DNA of 64,000 bases. It comes from Salpingoeca rosetta. Lineage: Eukaryota > Protista > Choanoflagellata. The position numbers were made by a program, and so were the translations under genes. A model generated the notes under the pieces. That model saw nothing but the letters and a program-made list of their open reading frames with translations, searched no databases and was not told the origin of the DNA. The stretch spans positions 2,316,973-2,380,972 of the forward strand of contig JAWQFM010000001.1 of assembly GCA_033442325.1 (NCBI GenBank). The letters are read 5' to 3'. This document shows positions 2,559 through 38,804 of the stretch, in pieces; position 1 is the stretch's first letter, and each line of letters starts with the position of its first letter.

Positions 2559-3054
2559 GTACTTGAGTTGTGAGGCAAACAAGGATGTAGGATGAATGAA
2601 CACTCTAACAAAAAGAAACAGAGCAGGAGACAAGAATTGTCGACAACGCAAAGTGGTCACGTGGCAATGTTTGTTGAGAGTTGTGTGGTTATGTGGCGTG
2701 TTATGCAAGAGCACGTAGCAAATTGTGGTGTCGCAAAGAAAAGAAGTTAATTTAAATGAGGGTTTGGGCACGTGTGTTGGATGTAGAAACGAATCAGTTC
2801 GTACAATATGGTTCGTGTGCGTCCCTGTTCTCTGTGCGGGCAAACAGGGCCCCGCACATATTACATACAAACTCTTTGAGCGATGCGTGCCCATATGGCG
2901 AGGCCCAGGCCGGACAACATCGCACACGGGACACACCTCGTGATCGTCGCTGGGTAGAATGGTGTCCCCTATCAGCCGCTCCAGTTGACGCAGCGCGACG
3001 CGCGTGCGCGTCGTTGTTAACATCACTGTTCCAGTGTCAATTGTTGCAAGTTCA

Positions 3055-27400: not shown

Positions 27401-29079
27401 GTACGGACGGTGCGAAGGGTGAGAAGGGCATTGCTGGTACCCCAGGTGCCCCTGGCCCCCGTGGTCGCCCTGGTGAGGACGGTCTGGATGGGCGCAAGGG
27501 TCGTCGTGGCGACACTGGCCCCGCAGGCAGCGACGGAAGCGACGGTGCAAACGGCGCGAACGGCGACAAGGGCCTCACAGGCCCTGAAGGCTTGAAGGGA
27601 CGCCAAGGCGAGGACGGTATCCCAGGTACCCCAGGCTTTGACGGCACGGATGGTGCTGTTGGTGACCCAGGTATCAACGGGCCCCGTGGCGAGAAGGGCG
27701 AGCGTGGCATCGACGGGATCGACGGAAACCCAGGCACGGATGGAAACCCAGGTGCTGATGGTGCTCCAGGGCCCGACGGCGCAAAGGGTGTCAAGGGTGT
27801 TGCTGGCGATCGCGGTGACGATGGTACGCCAGGTCCCCGTGGTGAGCGCGGTGACATTGGCCCTGACGGCGCGGATGGGACCCCAGGCGTTGATGGTTCC
27901 AACGGTTCCCCTGGTCTCAAGGGTCAGCGCGGCTTCACTGGACTCGTTGGCGAGCCAGGCGACGACGGCCTTCCTGGCAGCGATGGTGCCCCCGGCCCTG
28001 CTGGGCCAAAGGGATTGCGAGGCACCGCGGGGCCTGCAGGACGCCAAGGCGAGAGCGGGCTTGATGGCGACGTTGGCGAGCCTGGCCTTCCCGGAGAGCC
28101 TGGTGAGGACGGTGCTGACGGTGCGGATGGTGAGGACGGAACCCCAGGTGCTCGTGGAGACAAGGGCTTCGCAGGTACCCCAGGCACAGATGGTGAGCCC
28201 GGTGCTGATGGTGCTGACGGTGCCCCCGGCCCACGAGGCATCAAGGGTCGCGCAGGCAGCAACGCGCCTGATGGTGCCCCTGGTGACCCAGGCTTCACAG
28301 GCACGGACGGTGCACAAGGCCCACGCGGTCCGGACGGCCCAGCAGGCCGCGATGGACTTCAAGGTCTCAAGGGTGGCCGCGGTGACCCTGGCGAGGCTGG
28401 CCTCTTGGGCGCCCCAGGTGACGTTGGTCTGAAGGGTGCGCGCGGCCGTGACGGCGAGAAGGGTGTCAAGGGCTTCCGCGGACACCTTGGTGCTGATGGC
28501 GACGAAGGCGAGCGCGGTCCAATGGGCCCTATGGGCGACACTGGCACAGACGGACGCCCTGGTACCCCTGGCTTGCCGGGTGCCCCTGGTGATGACGGCC
28601 GTGACGGTACCAAGGGACGTCGCGGTGACAAGGGACAGGCTGGTGACGCGGCTGTTGGCGACAAGGGCCGCGCTGGTGCGCCTGGCGATGACGGCATCAA
28701 GGGCGTTGCCGGCCTCAAGGGGTCGGAGGGCGCCGAGGGTGCTTGCATCTCCACCCCAGAGTGGGAGGCGTGGACAGCCTCGCTCACGTCCTGGATCTCT
28801 GCCTGGAACGACTTCATGAACGCTGGCGGCATCACCCCGTGTGCCGACTACAACGACACTGCTGACGAGGTTGACAGCTTCATTGACAGCATGCTGTCGT
28901 GGTACCGCGAGCTGCTGGCTGAGCGCCTGGACATGTACGAGCGTGCATTTGACCAGCTCGACGTCGACATTGAGACGGCGCGCCAGAACTGCGAGGAGGC
29001 GCACGACGATCAGGACCTGCTCATCTCATCCCAGCTGGATGACATTGAGGCCCAGATTGACGCCATCTGCAACCCTTGA
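17156..29079 (+). CDS. Secreted collagen-like protein: signal peptide, Cys-rich N-domain, Gly-X-Y repeats, three VWA domains, internal and C-terminal helical domains (about 13 exons)
   Basis: Signal [20 protein letters not shown]; C..TC....[20 protein letters not shown]; hundreds of Gly-X-Y triplets in register across the junctions checked; VWA MIDAS motifs DSSGS (~20335), DGSGS (~21815) and DNSGS (~23380); stop at 29077-29079. Confidence 0.9.
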
Positions 29080-29696
29080 GCTGGCTGCTTGGTGGTGGTG
29101 ATGATGCGACGGTGATTTGCCGTGGCCATGTACAGCCACAGCTGTGCTTAGGCTCATTCAGCGGTTTACTGTCGTTTGTCCTCCCTCCCTCCTCTTCCCC
29201 CGTCTTTTCTGTTTACCTTTTCTTCTCCTCTTCCCCTCTTTCTTTGTCCTTGTCCCTTGTGATGTGCTTCCTACCAGTTTTGCACGGCCTTCGAGCTACC
29301 GTGGTGCAGCACAAGACACACATGTGCGTGCGATTTCCATTTGTCTTGCCAGCAGCACTGGCAGTTTGTCTTGTCTAGCTGGTGTTTTGAGGCGGTGTGT
29401 TGCTTGAATTTGGGTGTCTCATTGCTGCCGCTGCTTGATGCTTGTGCGATTGTTGTTTCTGTGTTTGTGCTTCCATCTCTGTCAACCCTTTCTTCCTACC
29501 TCAACCATACACACGCTCACATTGTAACACGTCCCAACACTTGAGTGCTTTAATTGTGACATTCGTGCATGTGGTGGTGATGGTGTGTGACGTGAATCAT
29601 CCAGCGTGCATGGGTCAAACACAGCAGAGGTTCGAGGGCAAAACAAAAGTGGCCTGGGGGGAAAGTGAACCAATGAGCCGTGCACAACCGAAGCAC

Positions 29697-29741
29697 ATCA
29701 GCTGAGGCCGGCAACACAGTGCTTTACGGCAACAGCATCAC
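29697..29741 (-). promoter_or_regulatory. Orphan duplicate SECIS element
   Basis: Identical to the SECIS at 37216-37260, but preceded only by a frameshifted MsrA last exon. Confidence 0.75.
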
Positions 29742-29964
29742 AAAGCATGGACAAAACAATCACCCATTCAATGCCAGCATACACTCGCGCATGCTGCTGA
29801 GATGTAACGTGGTCGCATTGGTACAGAACATGAAAAAGCAGAAGGCACAACAAAGGTTGTGTGTAAGTGTGTGTGTATGTGTGTGTGTGTGTATGTGTGT
29901 GAGCGGTCATCGTAGTAATGACGCGCAGGCGTGCGGCGTGGGCTTGATCGGCGGCACCACGCAA

Positions 29965-30022
29965 TCAAAGAGAGTTTCCGTGCTCAGTAGAGGGGGCCGA
30001 GCAGGGAGCGGTCCAAGTATTT
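29965..30022 (-). pseudogene. Orphan MsrA last exon with a +1 frameshift
   Basis: Reads KYLDRSLLGPLY* versus KYLDRSLLGPSTEHGNSL* in the other copy (G5 vs G4 run); no upstream MsrA exons. Confidence 0.75.
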
Positions 30023-30415
30023 CTGTCCATGCAGGCAAGAAGGCACGACCAAACGAGCAATAGCAGCGACAGCAGCGACAGCATTCAAGTGAGGGCAAGT
30101 GAGAGACGTAGAAGAACGCAAACAAGAGAAGGAGAAGGAGCCGAAGAAGAGGAGGAAGAAGAACAAGAAGAACAAGAATAGCAAGAACAAGCCAGGCTCG
30201 CCTCTCTCCCGGTCGGGCTGGCTGCATTCCCACTTGATGGGGCAAGACCCGACTAGTCTCGGCATGATGGGACGTACAGAGGGACAGGTAGTTGATGGCA
30301 ATCAATGCGAAGCGTGTGGCTACTTCTTACATGCGACTGGTGGGGGCATTGGTTTATTCGAATGGGAAGAGGGGTTGGTGTGTTCGACTGGAAGACTTGC
30401 ACGGGAGGACAGGTG

Positions 30416-31008
30416 ATTCAGGGCTGCACAAAGACAAACGTCAGCAAACGTGTGGCTACTACAGTACCACAACACAACGGGCCTGGCACAAAACCGCGCG
30501 AAAGATTGCCATATCATTCGAGTGGCGACAAGCAATCGAAACACAGCAACTTGCGCGCGAATTCAGGGCTGCACAAACGTCAGCAAACGTGTGGCTACTA
30601 CAGTACAACAACACAACAGACCCGGCACAAAACCGCGCGAAAGATTGCCATATCATTCGAGTGGCGACAAGCAATCGAAACACAGCAACTTGCGCGCGAA
30701 TTCAGGGCTGCACAAACGTCAGCAAACGTGTGGCTACTACAGTACAACAACACAACAGACCCGGCACAAAACCGCGCGAAAGATTGCCATATCATTCGAG
30801 TGGCGACAAGCAATCGAAACACAGCAACTTGCGCGCGAATTCAGGGCTGCACAAACGTCAGCAAACGTGTGGCTACTACAGTACAACAACACAACAGACC
30901 CGGCACAAAACCGCGCGAAAGATTGCCATATCATTCGAGTGACGACAAGCAATCGAAACACGGCAACTGCGCGAATTCAGGGCTGCACAAACGTCAGCAA
31001 ACGTGTGG
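30416..31008 (+). repeat. 139-bp tandem array, about 4.2 copies
   Basis: Unit ATTCAGGGCTGCACAAACGTCAGCAAACGTGTGGCTACTACAG...CTTGCGCGCGA; ORF ends recur at 30459, 30598, 30737 and 30876 (period 139). Confidence 0.97.
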
Positions 31009-36258: not shown

Positions 36259-36598
36259 TGCTTGCATCTCCACCCCAGAGTGGAAGGCGTGGACAGCCTC
36301 GCTCACGTCCTGGATCTCTGCCTGGAACGACTTCATGAACGCTGGCGGCATCACCCCGTGTGCCGACTACAACGACACTGCTGACGAGGTTGACAGCTTC
36401 ATTGACAGCATGCTGTCGTGGTACCGCGAGCTGCTGGCTGAGCGCCTGGACATGTACGAGCGTGCATTTGACCAGCTCGACGTCGACATTGAGACGGCGC
36501 GCCAGAACTGCGAGGAGGCGCACGACGATCAGGACCTGCTCATCTCATCCCAGCTGGATGACATTGAGGCCCAGATTGACGCCATCTGCAACCCTTGA
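36259..36598 (+). pseudogene. Orphan copy of the collagen C-terminal domain
   Basis: CISTPEWKAW...IDAICNP* (E>K versus the intact gene) with no upstream collagen exons. Confidence 0.75.
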
Positions 36599-37215
36599 GC
36601 TGGCTGCTTGGTGGTGGTGATGATGCGACGGTGATTTGCCGTGGCCATGTACAGCCACAGCTGTGCTTAGGCTCATTCAGCGGTTTACTGTCGTTTGTCC
36701 TCCCTCCCTCCTCTTCCCCCGTCTTTTCTGTTTACCTTTTCTTCTCCTCTTCCCCTCTTTCTTTGTCCTTGTCCCTTGTGATGTGCTTCCTACCAGTTTT
36801 GCACGGCCTTCGAGCTACCGTGGTGCAGCACAAGACACACATGTGCGTGCGATTTCCATTTGTCTTGCCAGCAGCACTGGCAGTTTGTCTTGTCTAGCTG
36901 GTGTTTTGAGGCGGTGTGTTGCTTGAATTTGGGTGTCTCATTGCTGCCGCTGCTTGATGCTTGTGCGATTGTTGTTTCTGTGTTTGTGCTTCCATCTCTG
37001 TCAACCCTTTCTTCCTACCTCAACCATACACACGCTCACATTGTAACACGTCCCAACACTTGAGTGCTTTAATTGTGACATTCGTGCATGTGGTGGTGAT
37101 GGTGTGTGACGTGAATCATCCAGCGTGCATGGGTCAAACACAGCAGAGGTTCGAGGGCAAAACAAAAGTGGCCTGGGGGGAAAGTGAACCAATGAGCCGT
37201 GCACAACCGAAGCAC

Positions 37216-37260
37216 ATCAGCTGAGGCCGGCAACACAGTGCTTTACGGCAACAGCATCAC
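37216..37260 (-). promoter_or_regulatory. SECIS element (type II, GUGA variant) in the MsrA 3' UTR
   Basis: Minus strand reads GUGAU-GCUGUUGCCG-U-AAA-GCA(CUGUGU)UGC-CGGCCUCAGC-UGAU: UGAN/NGAN quartet, helix II with 8/10 pairs, unpaired AAA and a mini helix III; about 220 nt after the stop. Confidence 0.85.
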
Positions 37261-37483
37261 AAAGCATGGACAAAACAATCACCCATTCAATGCCAGCATA
37301 CACTCGCGCATGCTGCTGAGATGTAACGTGGTCGCATTGGTACAGAACATGAAAAAGCAGAAGGCACAACAAAGGTTGTGTGTAAGTGTGTGTGTATGTG
37401 TGTGTGTGTGTATGTGTGTGAGCGGTCATCGTAGTAATGACGCGCAGGCGTGCGGCGTGGGCTTGATCGGCGGCACCACGCAA

Positions 37484-37819
37484 TCAAAGAGAGTTTCCGT
37501 GCTCAGTAGAGGGGCCGAGCAGGGAGCGGTCCAAGTATTTCTGTCCATGCAGGCAAGGCAGGCACGACCAAACGAGCAGTAGCAGCGGCGACAGCGGCGA
37601 CAGCATTCAAGTGAGGGCAAGTGAGAGACGTAGAAGAACGCAAACAAGAGAAGGAGAAGGAGCCGAAGAAGAGGAGGAAGAAGAACAAGAACAAGAACAA
37701 GAACAACCACAGCAGCAGCAGCAACAACAACAAGAAAAACAAGAACAACAAGAACAACAAGAACAACAACAACAACAAGAACAACAACAACAACAAGAAC
37801 AACAACAACAACAAGAAAC

Positions 37820-37883
<64 letters not shown>

Positions 37884-38804
37884 CCAACTGCTGTCGCACC
37901 TGGTGGTAGTCCTCTGCGAGGTAGAAGGGGCCAAGTGGAGCGACGTGTGTCGCAATCTTGCGCCCGCGATAGCGAGCCTTCTTCTCCTCGGCCTCAATTG
38001 CCTTGAGAATGGCCTGCTTCTGGTCTTCTGTCTGGTACCACAACGCGCTCTGATACTGGCGGCTGGACTTGCGTGACGCGTCATGCTGCACCCTGTTCAA
38101 ACCGAGTTTCATGCAAGCAAACAAGACAGGCAGGACAGCAATGTTGTTACATGACGGGCTGTTACATGACACTAACTAACACCACCAACAAGAAGAAAAA
38201 AATTGAAATGCGCAGGCAAGCAAGCAAGTGGTACGTCGTTGACCGTGGAGTGCAGACAAACCAAAGAGGTGATCCAAACCAAGGGCGTGTCATCACACCA
38301 ATGTGTTACATTTGTTAATCCACTCACTCAGACACACACACACATATACACACATACACACACACATACACACAGACACACAGAGAAAGACAGCATGCAC
38401 ACCACCCCAATCACCACCACCATCACCACCAATCAATAACAGCGACGCATGCACACCACCACAATCACCACCACCAACAACCACCAACCAACAACAGCGA
38501 CGCAAGCGCACCAGAACTTGTCGAGGAGCTGTTCGAATGTGACGACCTTGGGGTCGAATTCAATCTGCACAGCCTCTGTGTGATCTCCGAGGCTGTAGTA
38601 GGTGGGGTTGCTCTTGTGCCCACCCGTGTACCCGACGCGAGTTCGCAACACCCCAGGCATTGTTGCAAAGGCCACGTCGGGTCCCCAAAATCAGCCAAGC
38701 GCAAACGTCGCCGTCTGCAGCTTGTCCGAGGGTGTTTTCACTTCAATCAACGGGCACCCCGTTGACGAGCCTCCAGAGTTCTCCAGGCTCATGATGCACC
38801 CCAT
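37484..38804 (-). CDS. MSRA: Methionine-S-sulfoxide reductase A, selenocysteine form (3 exons)
   Basis: QTATFALG-[TGA 38691-38693]-FWGPD..GVLRTRVGYTGG..PTYYSLGDHTEAVQIEFDP..LLDKFW|..QYQSALWY..FYLAEDYHQ|KYL. The TGA sits exactly at the catalytic Cys of GCFW. Confidence 0.93.

What the first reader, a model, noticed from the sequence alone, without database searches (positions are those of the whole stretch)
37216..38804. Hidden selenoprotein: Sec-MsrA with an in-frame UGA and a GUGA-type SECIS
Seen: the ORF track breaks at TGA 38691-38693, exactly the catalytic residue (G-U-F-W), and conserved MsrA sequence continues in frame. A well-formed type II SECIS with G instead of A before the quartet lies about 220 nt after the stop. 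No C-terminal resolving Cys is visible. Known: Sec-MsrA occurs sporadically in algae, some invertebrates and bacteria, whereas vertebrate MsrA uses Cys. Standard annotation would likely truncate or mis-splice this gene.
Basis: partly seen in the sequence, partly recalled or inferred. Interest (0 to 1): 0.75.

Follow-up and report, generated by a model that had tools for sequence, protein, structure and literature searches.

The report
Hidden selenocysteine MsrA gene, choanoflagellate
This Salpingoeca rosetta gene almost certainly makes a methionine-sulfoxide repair enzyme with selenocysteine at its active site, which the public annotation cuts short at the UGA; this kind of selenoprotein is already known, so the result is mainly an annotation correction, with a few unusual clade-specific features.

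Summary
A three-exon MsrA gene lies on the minus strand (ATG 38804, stop 37486-37484). It has an in-frame TGA (38693-38691) exactly where homologues carry the catalytic Cys of GCFWG. The Pfam PMSR match runs on both sides of it.

The public S. rosetta protein (132 aa) uses the same splice sites but starts at the first Met after the TGA, so it lacks the active site.

A type II, GUGA-type SECIS lies 216-275 nt past the stop (37268-37209). It scores 25 bits, below Rfam's cut-off of 35. It and its duplicate were the only SECIS_1 matches the genome search reported.

Four related environmental or transcriptome mRNAs keep TGA at the same codon, with synonymous changes around it. Each has its own SECIS-like hairpin.

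The genome holds tRNA-Sec, and exons matching SepSecS and SPS.

The nearest solved structure is the Clostridium oremlandii selenoprotein MsrA. This clade, however, lacks that enzyme's essential C-terminal helical domain. It has instead an N-terminal MG(C)xxS acylation motif and a conserved Cys 21 residues before Sec.

Sec-MsrA and GUGA SECIS elements are both already published, so this is a new member of a known kind.

The scan had already flagged other hidden selenoproteins in this genome, but not this one.

The parts
38512..38804 (-). Exon 1 of the Sec-MsrA gene. The ATG at 38804 opens MGCIMS..., followed by the conserved Cys17, the Sec codon, and the first half of the PMSR domain. It ends in phase 2 (..TTC TG|gt).
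   Evidence: the N-terminus is conserved in relatives
38691..38693 (-). In-frame TGA, the predicted selenocysteine codon at the catalytic position (G-U-F-W-G).
   Evidence: TGA at the same codon in 4 related mRNAs; Cys at this position in homologues
38093..38511 (-). Intron 1 (GT...AG), rich in TG/GGT microsatellite.
   Evidence: the junction is the one in public protein P0001
37900..38092 (-). Exon 2, the second half of the PMSR domain (..HDASRKSSRQYQSALW...AEDYHQ).
37541..37899 (-). Intron 2 (GT...AG), largely (GTT)n.
37484..37540 (-). Exon 3 coding part, KYLDRSLLGPSTEHGNSL plus stop TGA (37486-37484).
37209..37268 (-). Type II SECIS element with a GUGA core: UGA-U / U-GA-U quartet, a 4+4 bp helix with an internal loop, unpaired AAA 12 nt after the quartet, and an apical mini-stem.
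   Evidence: Rfam SECIS_1 25 bits; folding of the inner part -13.6 kcal/mol, z -2.05; own pattern scan
28740..30178 (-). Orphan 99.2%-identical duplicate of 36259-37703. It holds the end of intron 2, an exon-3 copy (30022-29984, one extra C, reading ...LLGPLY*), the 3' UTR and an identical SECIS copy (29749-29690). It has no exons 1-2. It also carries the 3' end of a convergent collagen-like gene.

Best explanation
The locus is a functional three-exon gene for a selenocysteine-containing methionine-S-sulfoxide reductase A of about 180 residues.

The UGA at codon 38 is recoded to Sec by the type II SECIS in the 3' UTR, acting with the organism's tRNA-Sec and Sec-insertion machinery. Sec38 would attack the sulfoxide of Met-S-O and form a selenenic acid.

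The enzyme belongs to the same MsrA subfamily as the Clostridium oremlandii selenoprotein MsrA. It is, however, a single-domain form without the C-terminal helical domain.

Inferred, not shown: the N-terminal MGCIMS motif directs myristoylation, probably with palmitoylation of Cys3, and so places the enzyme on membranes. The conserved Cys17, 21 residues before Sec on a flexible arm, may resolve the selenenic acid into a selenenylsulfide. Alternatively the enzyme is recycled by glutaredoxin/GSH, as the 1-Cys clostridial enzyme is.

The public 132-aa model is an annotation truncation at the UGA.
For: Shown here:

- Reading frame. The PMSR domain is continuous across the TGA. Active-site residues align with CoMsrA (PTY, HTE, RQY, YHQKY).
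- Sec/Cys pair. The TGA aligns with Cys of Cys-form homologues.
- Conservation. TGA is invariant in 5 of 5 orthologous sequences, while flanking codons differ synonymously (ACG/ACA/ACC, GGC/GGA/GGG, TTT/TTC, CCC/CCT/CCG).
- SECIS in S. rosetta. At E up to 10 the whole-genome search reported only two SECIS_1 matches (121 of 335 first-look candidates were scored). Both are this element and its duplicate copy. It lies 216-275 nt after this gene's stop.
- SECIS in relatives. Independent SECIS-like type II hairpins lie in the 3' UTRs of the related mRNAs: L012 (AUGA), L013 (GUGA), L027 (AUGA) and L020 (AUGA, atypical apex). The background rate of my scanner is 0.26 per kb.
- Sec machinery. tRNA-Sec with a UCA anticodon scores 67 bits. 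Colinear exons match SepSecS and SPS.
- Gene model. The public model uses the same exons but starts after the TGA.
- Structure. The closest PDB entries are CoMsrA 4LWJ-4LWM, 4U66 and 4W8C, by sequence (E 5e-29) and by fold (TM 0.76, 44% identity).

Literature:

- Sec-MsrA is widespread in early animals (PMC3473315).
- GUGA SECIS elements occur in algae and sponge.
- CoMsrA is recycled by glutaredoxin (PMC4333827).
- Mammalian MsrA has a myristoylated form (PMC10469991).
- The N-terminal MG[CGN]xxS motif and the Cys at -21 are seen in 4 of 5 relatives.
Against: - The SECIS score (25 bits) is below Rfam's gathering score (35).
- Rfam did not call the hairpins I found in the relatives. Those were selected by a structure filter of my own, so they are not independent proof.
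- I had no S. rosetta RNA-seq, cDNA or proteomic data, so neither retention of the UGA in the mature mRNA nor the mRNA 3' end is directly shown for this species.
- The window is 100% identical to the public assembly, so the base call has no independent confirmation.
- CoMsrA loses activity without its helical domain, and this protein has none.
- PSTK evidence is weak. eEFSec and SBP2 were not searched.
- In one relative (L024) an upstream in-frame ATG precedes the MG motif. In S. rosetta the frame stays open upstream as far as ATG 39026.
Confidence: 0.9

Rival explanations
1. The public model is right. Translation starts at the Met after the TGA (ATG 38660) and gives a 132-aa MsrA-like protein without a catalytic residue. 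The upstream frame is 5' UTR or a uORF.
For: This is the deposited annotation (P0001). Gene callers produced the same truncated product for relatives (P0008, P0018, P0020).
Against: The 37 codons before the TGA are conserved at the protein level, with synonymous DNA changes, in five sequences. They complete the PMSR profile, adding about 11 bits (searches compared). A product lacking GCFWG has no nucleophile. A SECIS lies in the 3' UTR.
Confidence: 0.03
2. The gene is a pseudogene or nonsense allele of a Cys-MsrA, or the TGA is a sequencing error for TGC/TGT.
For: A single base separates TGA from TGC/TGT. The window is identical to the single public assembly, so there is no independent read support. 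A canonical Cys-MsrA elsewhere (C24) could make this copy dispensable.
Against: The same TGA occurs in four other species' mRNAs. All three exons are intact with canonical splice sites. A SECIS and the Sec machinery are present.
Confidence: 0.03
3. The UGA is decoded, but not as Sec: near-cognate read-through inserting Trp, Cys or Arg. The hairpin is a chance SECIS look-alike.
For: The SECIS is below Rfam's curated threshold. My simple scanner finds 0.26 look-alikes per kb.
Against: The hairpin and its duplicate were the only SECIS_1 matches reported in 55 Mb. Each orthologue has a comparable hairpin in its 3' UTR. Trp or Arg at the nucleophile position would be inactive. This MsrA subfamily is overwhelmingly Sec-encoding in bacteria and in early animals.
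Confidence: 0.03

Closest known systems
Clostridium (Alkaliphilus) oremlandii selenoprotein MsrA (CoMsrA; PDB 4LWJ-4LWM, 4U66, 4W8C)
   Same: It is the closest solved relative by sequence (E 5e-29) and by fold (TM 0.76, 44% identity). Both have Sec in GUFWG, the same active-site residues, and no Cys downstream of Sec.
   Different: CoMsrA has a C-terminal five-helix domain (PF20939) that is essential for its activity. The choanoflagellate clade ends 6-16 residues after YHQKYL, and the genome has no PF20939 match. CoMsrA has no Cys at all; this protein has Cys3 and a conserved Cys17 in an N-terminal extension. It uses a eukaryotic 3'-UTR SECIS, not a bacterial in-ORF one.
Sec-MsrA of early-branching animals and green algae (Amphimedon, Trichoplax, Nematostella, Capitella, amphioxus; Chlamydomonas) as catalogued in PMC3473315
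   Same: These are eukaryotic MsrA genes with an in-frame UGA at the catalytic Cys position and a 3'-UTR SECIS. The GUGA_AA core is common in sponge and green algae.
   Different: A choanoflagellate MsrA was not mentioned in any paper I could search. In my tree the choanoflagellate-like clade is separate from the sponge and mite sequences, which keep the helical domain; the branching order is unresolved.
Mammalian myristoylated cytosolic/endosomal MsrA (PDB 2L90)
   Same: It is an MsrA with an N-terminal Met-Gly myristoylation signal that places it on membranes. Here MGCIMS fits the same consensus.
   Different: The mammalian enzyme is a Cys form with C-terminal resolving cysteines. The N-terminal sequences are not shown to be homologous. 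Acylation of the choanoflagellate protein is only predicted.
Canonical Cys-type MsrA of S. rosetta (G000 C24:1087344-1087919)
   Same: It has the same PMSR fold family and lies in the same genome.
   Different: It has GCFWG with Cys, the longer HNPT..RQGPDVGTQYRS loop, and a C-terminal Cys-containing tail (..YCGA). It has no in-frame TGA.

Membership tests
MsrA / PMSR (PF01625) | Match to the PMSR domain over its whole length | tested here: met
   Exon pieces score 63.3 and 43.5 bits. Read-through covers profile 1-73 at 74.7 bits. P0001 scores 114.6 bits.
MsrA / PMSR (PF01625) | G-[C/U]-F-W-G nucleophile motif at the start of the domain | tested here: met
   The sequence reads ALG-TGA-FWGPD. 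Cys-form homologues read ALGCFWGPD.
MsrA / PMSR (PF01625) | Met-S-sulfoxide reductase activity | not testable with these tools
   This needs an enzyme assay of the recombinant or native protein.
Eukaryotic selenoprotein gene | In-frame UGA aligned with Cys (or Sec) in homologues and conserved in orthologues | tested here: met
   TGA in 5 of 5 orthologous sequences with synonymous flanking changes. Cys in P0002, P0005, P0036 and P0052.
Eukaryotic selenoprotein gene | SECIS element (UGA../..GA kink-turn core, about 12-nt helix, unpaired AA, apical structure) in the 3' UTR | tested here: met
   Rfam SECIS_1 matches the full model at 25 bits, below the curated 35. This element and its duplicate were the only matches the genome search reported. 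The structure was checked by folding. I could not run SECISearch3. The mRNA 3' end is not known.
Eukaryotic selenoprotein gene | Sec machinery in the genome (tRNA-Sec, SepSecS, SPS, PSTK, eEFSec, SBP2) | tested here: inconclusive
   tRNA-Sec scores 67 bits against a cut-off of 47, with a UCA anticodon. SepSecS and SPS exon hits are colinear but below the whole-protein cut-offs, as expected for single exons. PSTK matches are weak. eEFSec and SBP2 were not searched.
Eukaryotic selenoprotein gene | Selenium actually incorporated | not testable with these tools
   This needs 75Se labelling or mass spectrometry.
Two-domain selenoprotein MsrA (CoMsrA type, PF01625 + PF20939) | C-terminal MsrA_helical domain | tested here: not met
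   P0001 and P0017 have no PF20939 hit, while the sponge and Gemmataceae relatives do. There is no match in the whole genome. Tails are 6-16 aa, against 62-90 aa in most of the other relatives.
Two-domain selenoprotein MsrA (CoMsrA type, PF01625 + PF20939) | 1-Cys (1-Sec) type: no other Cys in the protein | tested here: not met
   No Cys follows Sec, but Cys3 and Cys17 precede it. Cys at -21 is conserved in 4 of 5 relatives, and lies at -18 in the fifth.
N-myristoylated proteins | N-terminal M-G-{EDRKHPFYW}-x-x-[STAGCN]-{P} | tested here: met
   MGCIMSL, MGCLLSV, MGGKIST and MGNQPSS fit the pattern; MCSRLMR in the most distant relative does not. The true start codon and the modification itself are untested.

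The most novel reading that the evidence does not exclude
Choanoflagellate-type Sec-MsrA may be a distinct architectural variant. It would be a lipid-anchored (myristoyl-Gly2, palmitoyl-Cys3), single-domain selenoenzyme that has dispensed with the helical domain essential to its clostridial relative. It would recycle its selenenic acid through a conserved Cys on an N-terminal arm 21 residues before Sec. I do not know of such a resolving position in any MsrA (from memory, not searched).
Probability: 0.3. Interest if true: 0.5.

Novelty: new member of a known kind. Interest (0 to 1): 0.35.

Why it matters
- It corrects a public gene model in a widely used model organism for animal origins. The deposited 132-aa MsrA lacks its active site.
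- It adds MsrA to the choanoflagellate selenoproteome. This places Sec-MsrA and the GUGA SECIS in the sister group of animals, next to the sponge, placozoan and cnidarian cases.
- Together with the tRNA-Sec hit, it contradicts a published statement that no tRNA-Sec gene could be found in choanoflagellate genomes (PMC6188563).
- The clade's features (no helical domain, acylation motif, conserved N-terminal Cys) give a simple natural experiment on how 1-Sec MsrAs keep their active site and are recycled. S. rosetta now has genome editing (PMC7314544), so this is testable.

Tried and rejected
- Exon 2 alone as a word-search query found nothing. The public protein P0001 had to be used instead.
- Minimum-free-energy folding of the 91-nt SECIS region does not give the SECIS shape (z -0.74). 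This is expected, because the G.A quartet is not in the energy model. Folding the inner part does give it.
- Rfam did not call SECIS elements in the relatives' mRNAs. I found them with a home-made filter, which is partly circular.
- ARAGORN did not find the tRNA-Sec; Infernal did.
- The S. rosetta record found through P0001 is the same sequence as the window (100% over 7177 bp). It gives no independent check of the TGA. No S. rosetta RNA-derived contig was available.
- The tree does not resolve whether the clade is sister to the animal sequences or to bacterial ones, so I make no claim about vertical descent versus transfer.
The N-terminal arm has low pLDDT (52-75).
- The PSTK search was inconclusive.
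Exon pieces by reference and the public proteins P0001 and P0017 were used instead.

Full report
**What is there**

The window is eukaryotic. It is 100% identical over 7177 bp to Salpingoeca rosetta GCA_000188695.1 scaffold GL832955.1. The genome handle is 55.4 Mb.

On the minus strand, the sequence from ATG 38804 reads MGCIMSLENSGGSSTGCPLIEVKTPSDKLQTATFALG-TGA-FWGPDVAFATMPGVLRTRVGYTGG...DKF. The TGA is at 38693-38691.

The gene model is:
- Exon 1, 38804-38512. It ends ..TTC TG|GTGCGC.
- Exon 2, 38092-37900. It follows ..AACAG| and ends ..CAC CAG|GTGCGA.
- Exon 3, 37540-37484. It reads KYLDRSLLGPSTEHGNSL and stops at TGA 37486-37484.

The public protein P0001, named 'methionine sulfoxide reductase A [Salpingoeca rosetta]' (132 aa), uses exactly these junctions. 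It begins, however, at MPGVL, the first Met after the TGA. Its CDS span of 1177 nt equals window 38660-37484.

**Is the frame real across the TGA?**

Pfam PMSR matches the 59 residues after the TGA from profile position 9 (63.3 bits). It matches exon 2 at profile positions 87-141 (43.5 bits).

A six-frame genome search with PF01625 reads through the TGA and covers profile 1-73 at 74.7 bits, reporting '1 TGA' inside.

Cys-form homologues read ...KATFALGCFWGPD... (P0002, P0005). The TGA therefore sits exactly on the nucleophile.

**Conservation in relatives**

The nearest database relatives form one clade with 98% SH-aLRT support. They come from EukProt transcriptomes, a Logan assembly, and ENA/JGI assemblies.

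I fetched the DNA of four of them. All are intronless and mRNA-like. All carry TGA at the same codon.

Around that codon the third positions differ synonymously: ACG/ACA/ACC, GCG/GCA/GCC/GCT, GGC/GGA/GGG, TTT/TTC, GGA/GGT/GGC, CCC/CCT/CCG, GAC/GAT. One gene caller even translated the codon as Trp (P0017...FALGWFWGPD...).

This rules out a private nonsense mutation or a base-call error as the likely explanation.

**SECIS**

Rfam SECIS_1 matches 37268-37209(-) over the whole model at 25 bits. The gathering score is 35. E is 0.066 for the 2.5-kb stretch.

In the whole genome, the search reported only two SECIS_1 matches at E up to 10. These are this element and an identical copy at window 29749-29690. 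That search scored 121 of 335 first-look candidates, so it was not exhaustive.

The element reads G-UGA-U GCUG UU GCCG U-AAA-(mini-stem) CGGC CU CAGC U-GA-U:
- a U.U/G.A/A.G/U.U quartet with G before it;
- a 4+4-bp helix;
- unpaired AAA 12 nt from the quartet;
- an apical mini-stem, which makes it type II.

It is about 650 nt after the Sec codon in the spliced mRNA.

Each relative's 3' UTR holds one comparable hairpin of different sequence:
- L012, AUGA, 217 nt after the stop;
- L013, GUGA, 123 nt;
- L027, AUGA, 38 nt;
- L020, AUGA with an atypical apex, 83 nt.

My filter finds 0.26 such shapes per kb in the window. These hairpins are therefore supportive, not proof. Rfam did not call them.

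The GUGA_AA core is already described as the majority form in green algae and in the sponge Amphimedon (PMC3473315). SECISearch3 defines the core as UGAN/KGAW, without the preceding base (PMC3753652).

**Machinery**

Infernal finds one tRNA-Sec (67.1 bits against a cut-off of 47) at C34:611578-611663. It has a UCA anticodon and the long acceptor and D stems. ARAGORN misses it. This may explain why PMC6188563 reported no tRNA-Sec in choanoflagellates.

Colinear exon matches to SepSecS (C22) and to SPS/SelD (C8) are present. PSTK is inconclusive. eEFSec and SBP2 were not searched, though SBP2 of Monosiga is mentioned in PMC2746813.

Earlier notes of this scan list other hidden selenoproteins in this genome: PRXL2C-like, SelS-like, a GPx fusion and SelH.

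**Which MsrA?**

By sequence, the best solved relatives are the Clostridium oremlandii selenoprotein MsrA entries (E 5e-29). An AlphaFold model of the full-length relative P0017 (mean pLDDT 87.6) superposes best on them (TM 0.76, 44% identity).

About 110 of the 120 best database relatives begin right after the catalytic motif. Their genes were evidently cut at a UGA. This subfamily is therefore mostly Sec-encoding.

Most relatives carry a tail of about 62-90 residues after YHQKY, many with a PF20939 'Selenoprotein MsrA helical domain' hit. This includes a sponge and a mite sequence. In CoMsrA, removing that domain collapses the active site (PMC4333827).

The choanoflagellate-like clade ends 6-16 residues after YHQKYL. 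The genome has no PF20939 match.

The genome also has a canonical Cys-type MsrA on C24.

**Clade-specific N-terminus**

The five N-termini, aligned on Sec, share a Cys 21 residues before Sec: GCPLI, GCPLV, ACPYI and PCPLV. In the most distant one the Cys is at -18.

Four of the five start with MG[C/G/N]xxS, the N-myristoylation consensus. Two of these have Cys3, a typical palmitoylation partner.

No Cys follows Sec in the S. rosetta protein.

I infer membrane anchoring, and possibly an N-terminal resolving Cys. The arm has low model confidence (pLDDT 52-75), as flexible resolving tails do. Neither inference is shown.

Caveats: one relative has an upstream in-frame ATG. In S. rosetta the frame is open up to ATG 39026, through microsatellite-like sequence.

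**Duplication**

Window 28740-30178 is a 99.2% copy of 36259-37703. It contains the C-terminal end of a convergent collagen-like gene. On the minus strand it contains the end of MsrA intron 2, exon 3, the 3' UTR and the SECIS, but no exons 1-2.

The orphan exon-3 copy has one more C and reads ...LLGPLY*. This is the ending shared by the relatives (...PLY...TLY...KLY). The exon attached to the gene reads ...LLGPSTEHGNSL*. The gene's tail may therefore carry a recent 1-nt deletion or a homopolymer error.

**Verdict**

The finding is a genuine, mis-annotated Sec-MsrA gene (confidence 0.9). Its kind is known: Sec-MsrA in sponges, placozoans, cnidarians, annelids, amphioxus, algae and bacteria (PMC3473315), and GUGA SECIS elements.

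I found no paper naming a choanoflagellate MsrA selenoprotein. I rate it a new member of a known kind, with a modestly interesting architectural twist.

I used exon pieces by reference and the public proteins P0001 and P0017. No S. rosetta RNA data were reachable.

Noticed in passing
window 28740-30178 and 36259-37703: A 1446-bp direct duplication (99.2% identical), 7.5 kb apart. It carries the 3' end of a collagen-like gene on the + strand, and an orphan MsrA exon 3 with its SECIS on the - strand. The orphan exon keeps the ...GPLY* ending seen in relatives; the gene's own exon 3 has one C fewer and a different tail.
   Followed up: partly
proteins P0021-P0133: About 110 of the 120 best database relatives of this MsrA start just after the catalytic motif (M/V-x-GV-I/V-RTRVGY...). 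This points to mass truncation of Sec-MsrA genes at the UGA in metagenome annotations. A few are translated with Trp at that position (P0017, P0022, P0043, P0075).
   Followed up: partly
proteins P0003, P0006, P0009, P0010, P0011: These MsrA homologues (one is labelled Candidatus Saccharimonadales) have Asn in place of the catalytic Cys (ALGNFWEPEY). They are therefore probably not reductases.
   Followed up: no
G000 C34:611578-611663 (L001 1501-1586): A tRNA-Sec gene found by Infernal at 67 bits with a UCA anticodon. ARAGORN misses it. A 2018 paper (PMC6188563) reported that no tRNA-Sec could be found in choanoflagellate genomes.
   Followed up: yes
L008 about 2966-3015 (G000 C8 about 997.75 kb, + strand): A well-formed GUGA-type SECIS-like hairpin (GUGA-A-AGGCUG..AAA..mini-stem..AAGCCU-U-GA) about 1.3 kb downstream of the last detected SPS/SelD exon. 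It hints that SPS is itself a selenoprotein here and that GUGA cores are common in this genome.
   Followed up: no
protein P0132 (Oopsacas minuta): This sponge MsrA model keeps the helical domain but lacks the G-x-FWG motif. It is probably mis-spliced around a Sec codon.
   Followed up: no
G000 C24:1087344-1087919 (L002): A second, canonical Cys-type MsrA gene (GCFWGA..., C-terminal ..YCGA). Its introns are full of (CA)n/(TG)n.
   Followed up: partly
window 30434-31008: A tandem array of about four 139-bp units (98-100% identical) just upstream of the orphan MsrA 3' fragment. Its function is unknown.
   Followed up: no
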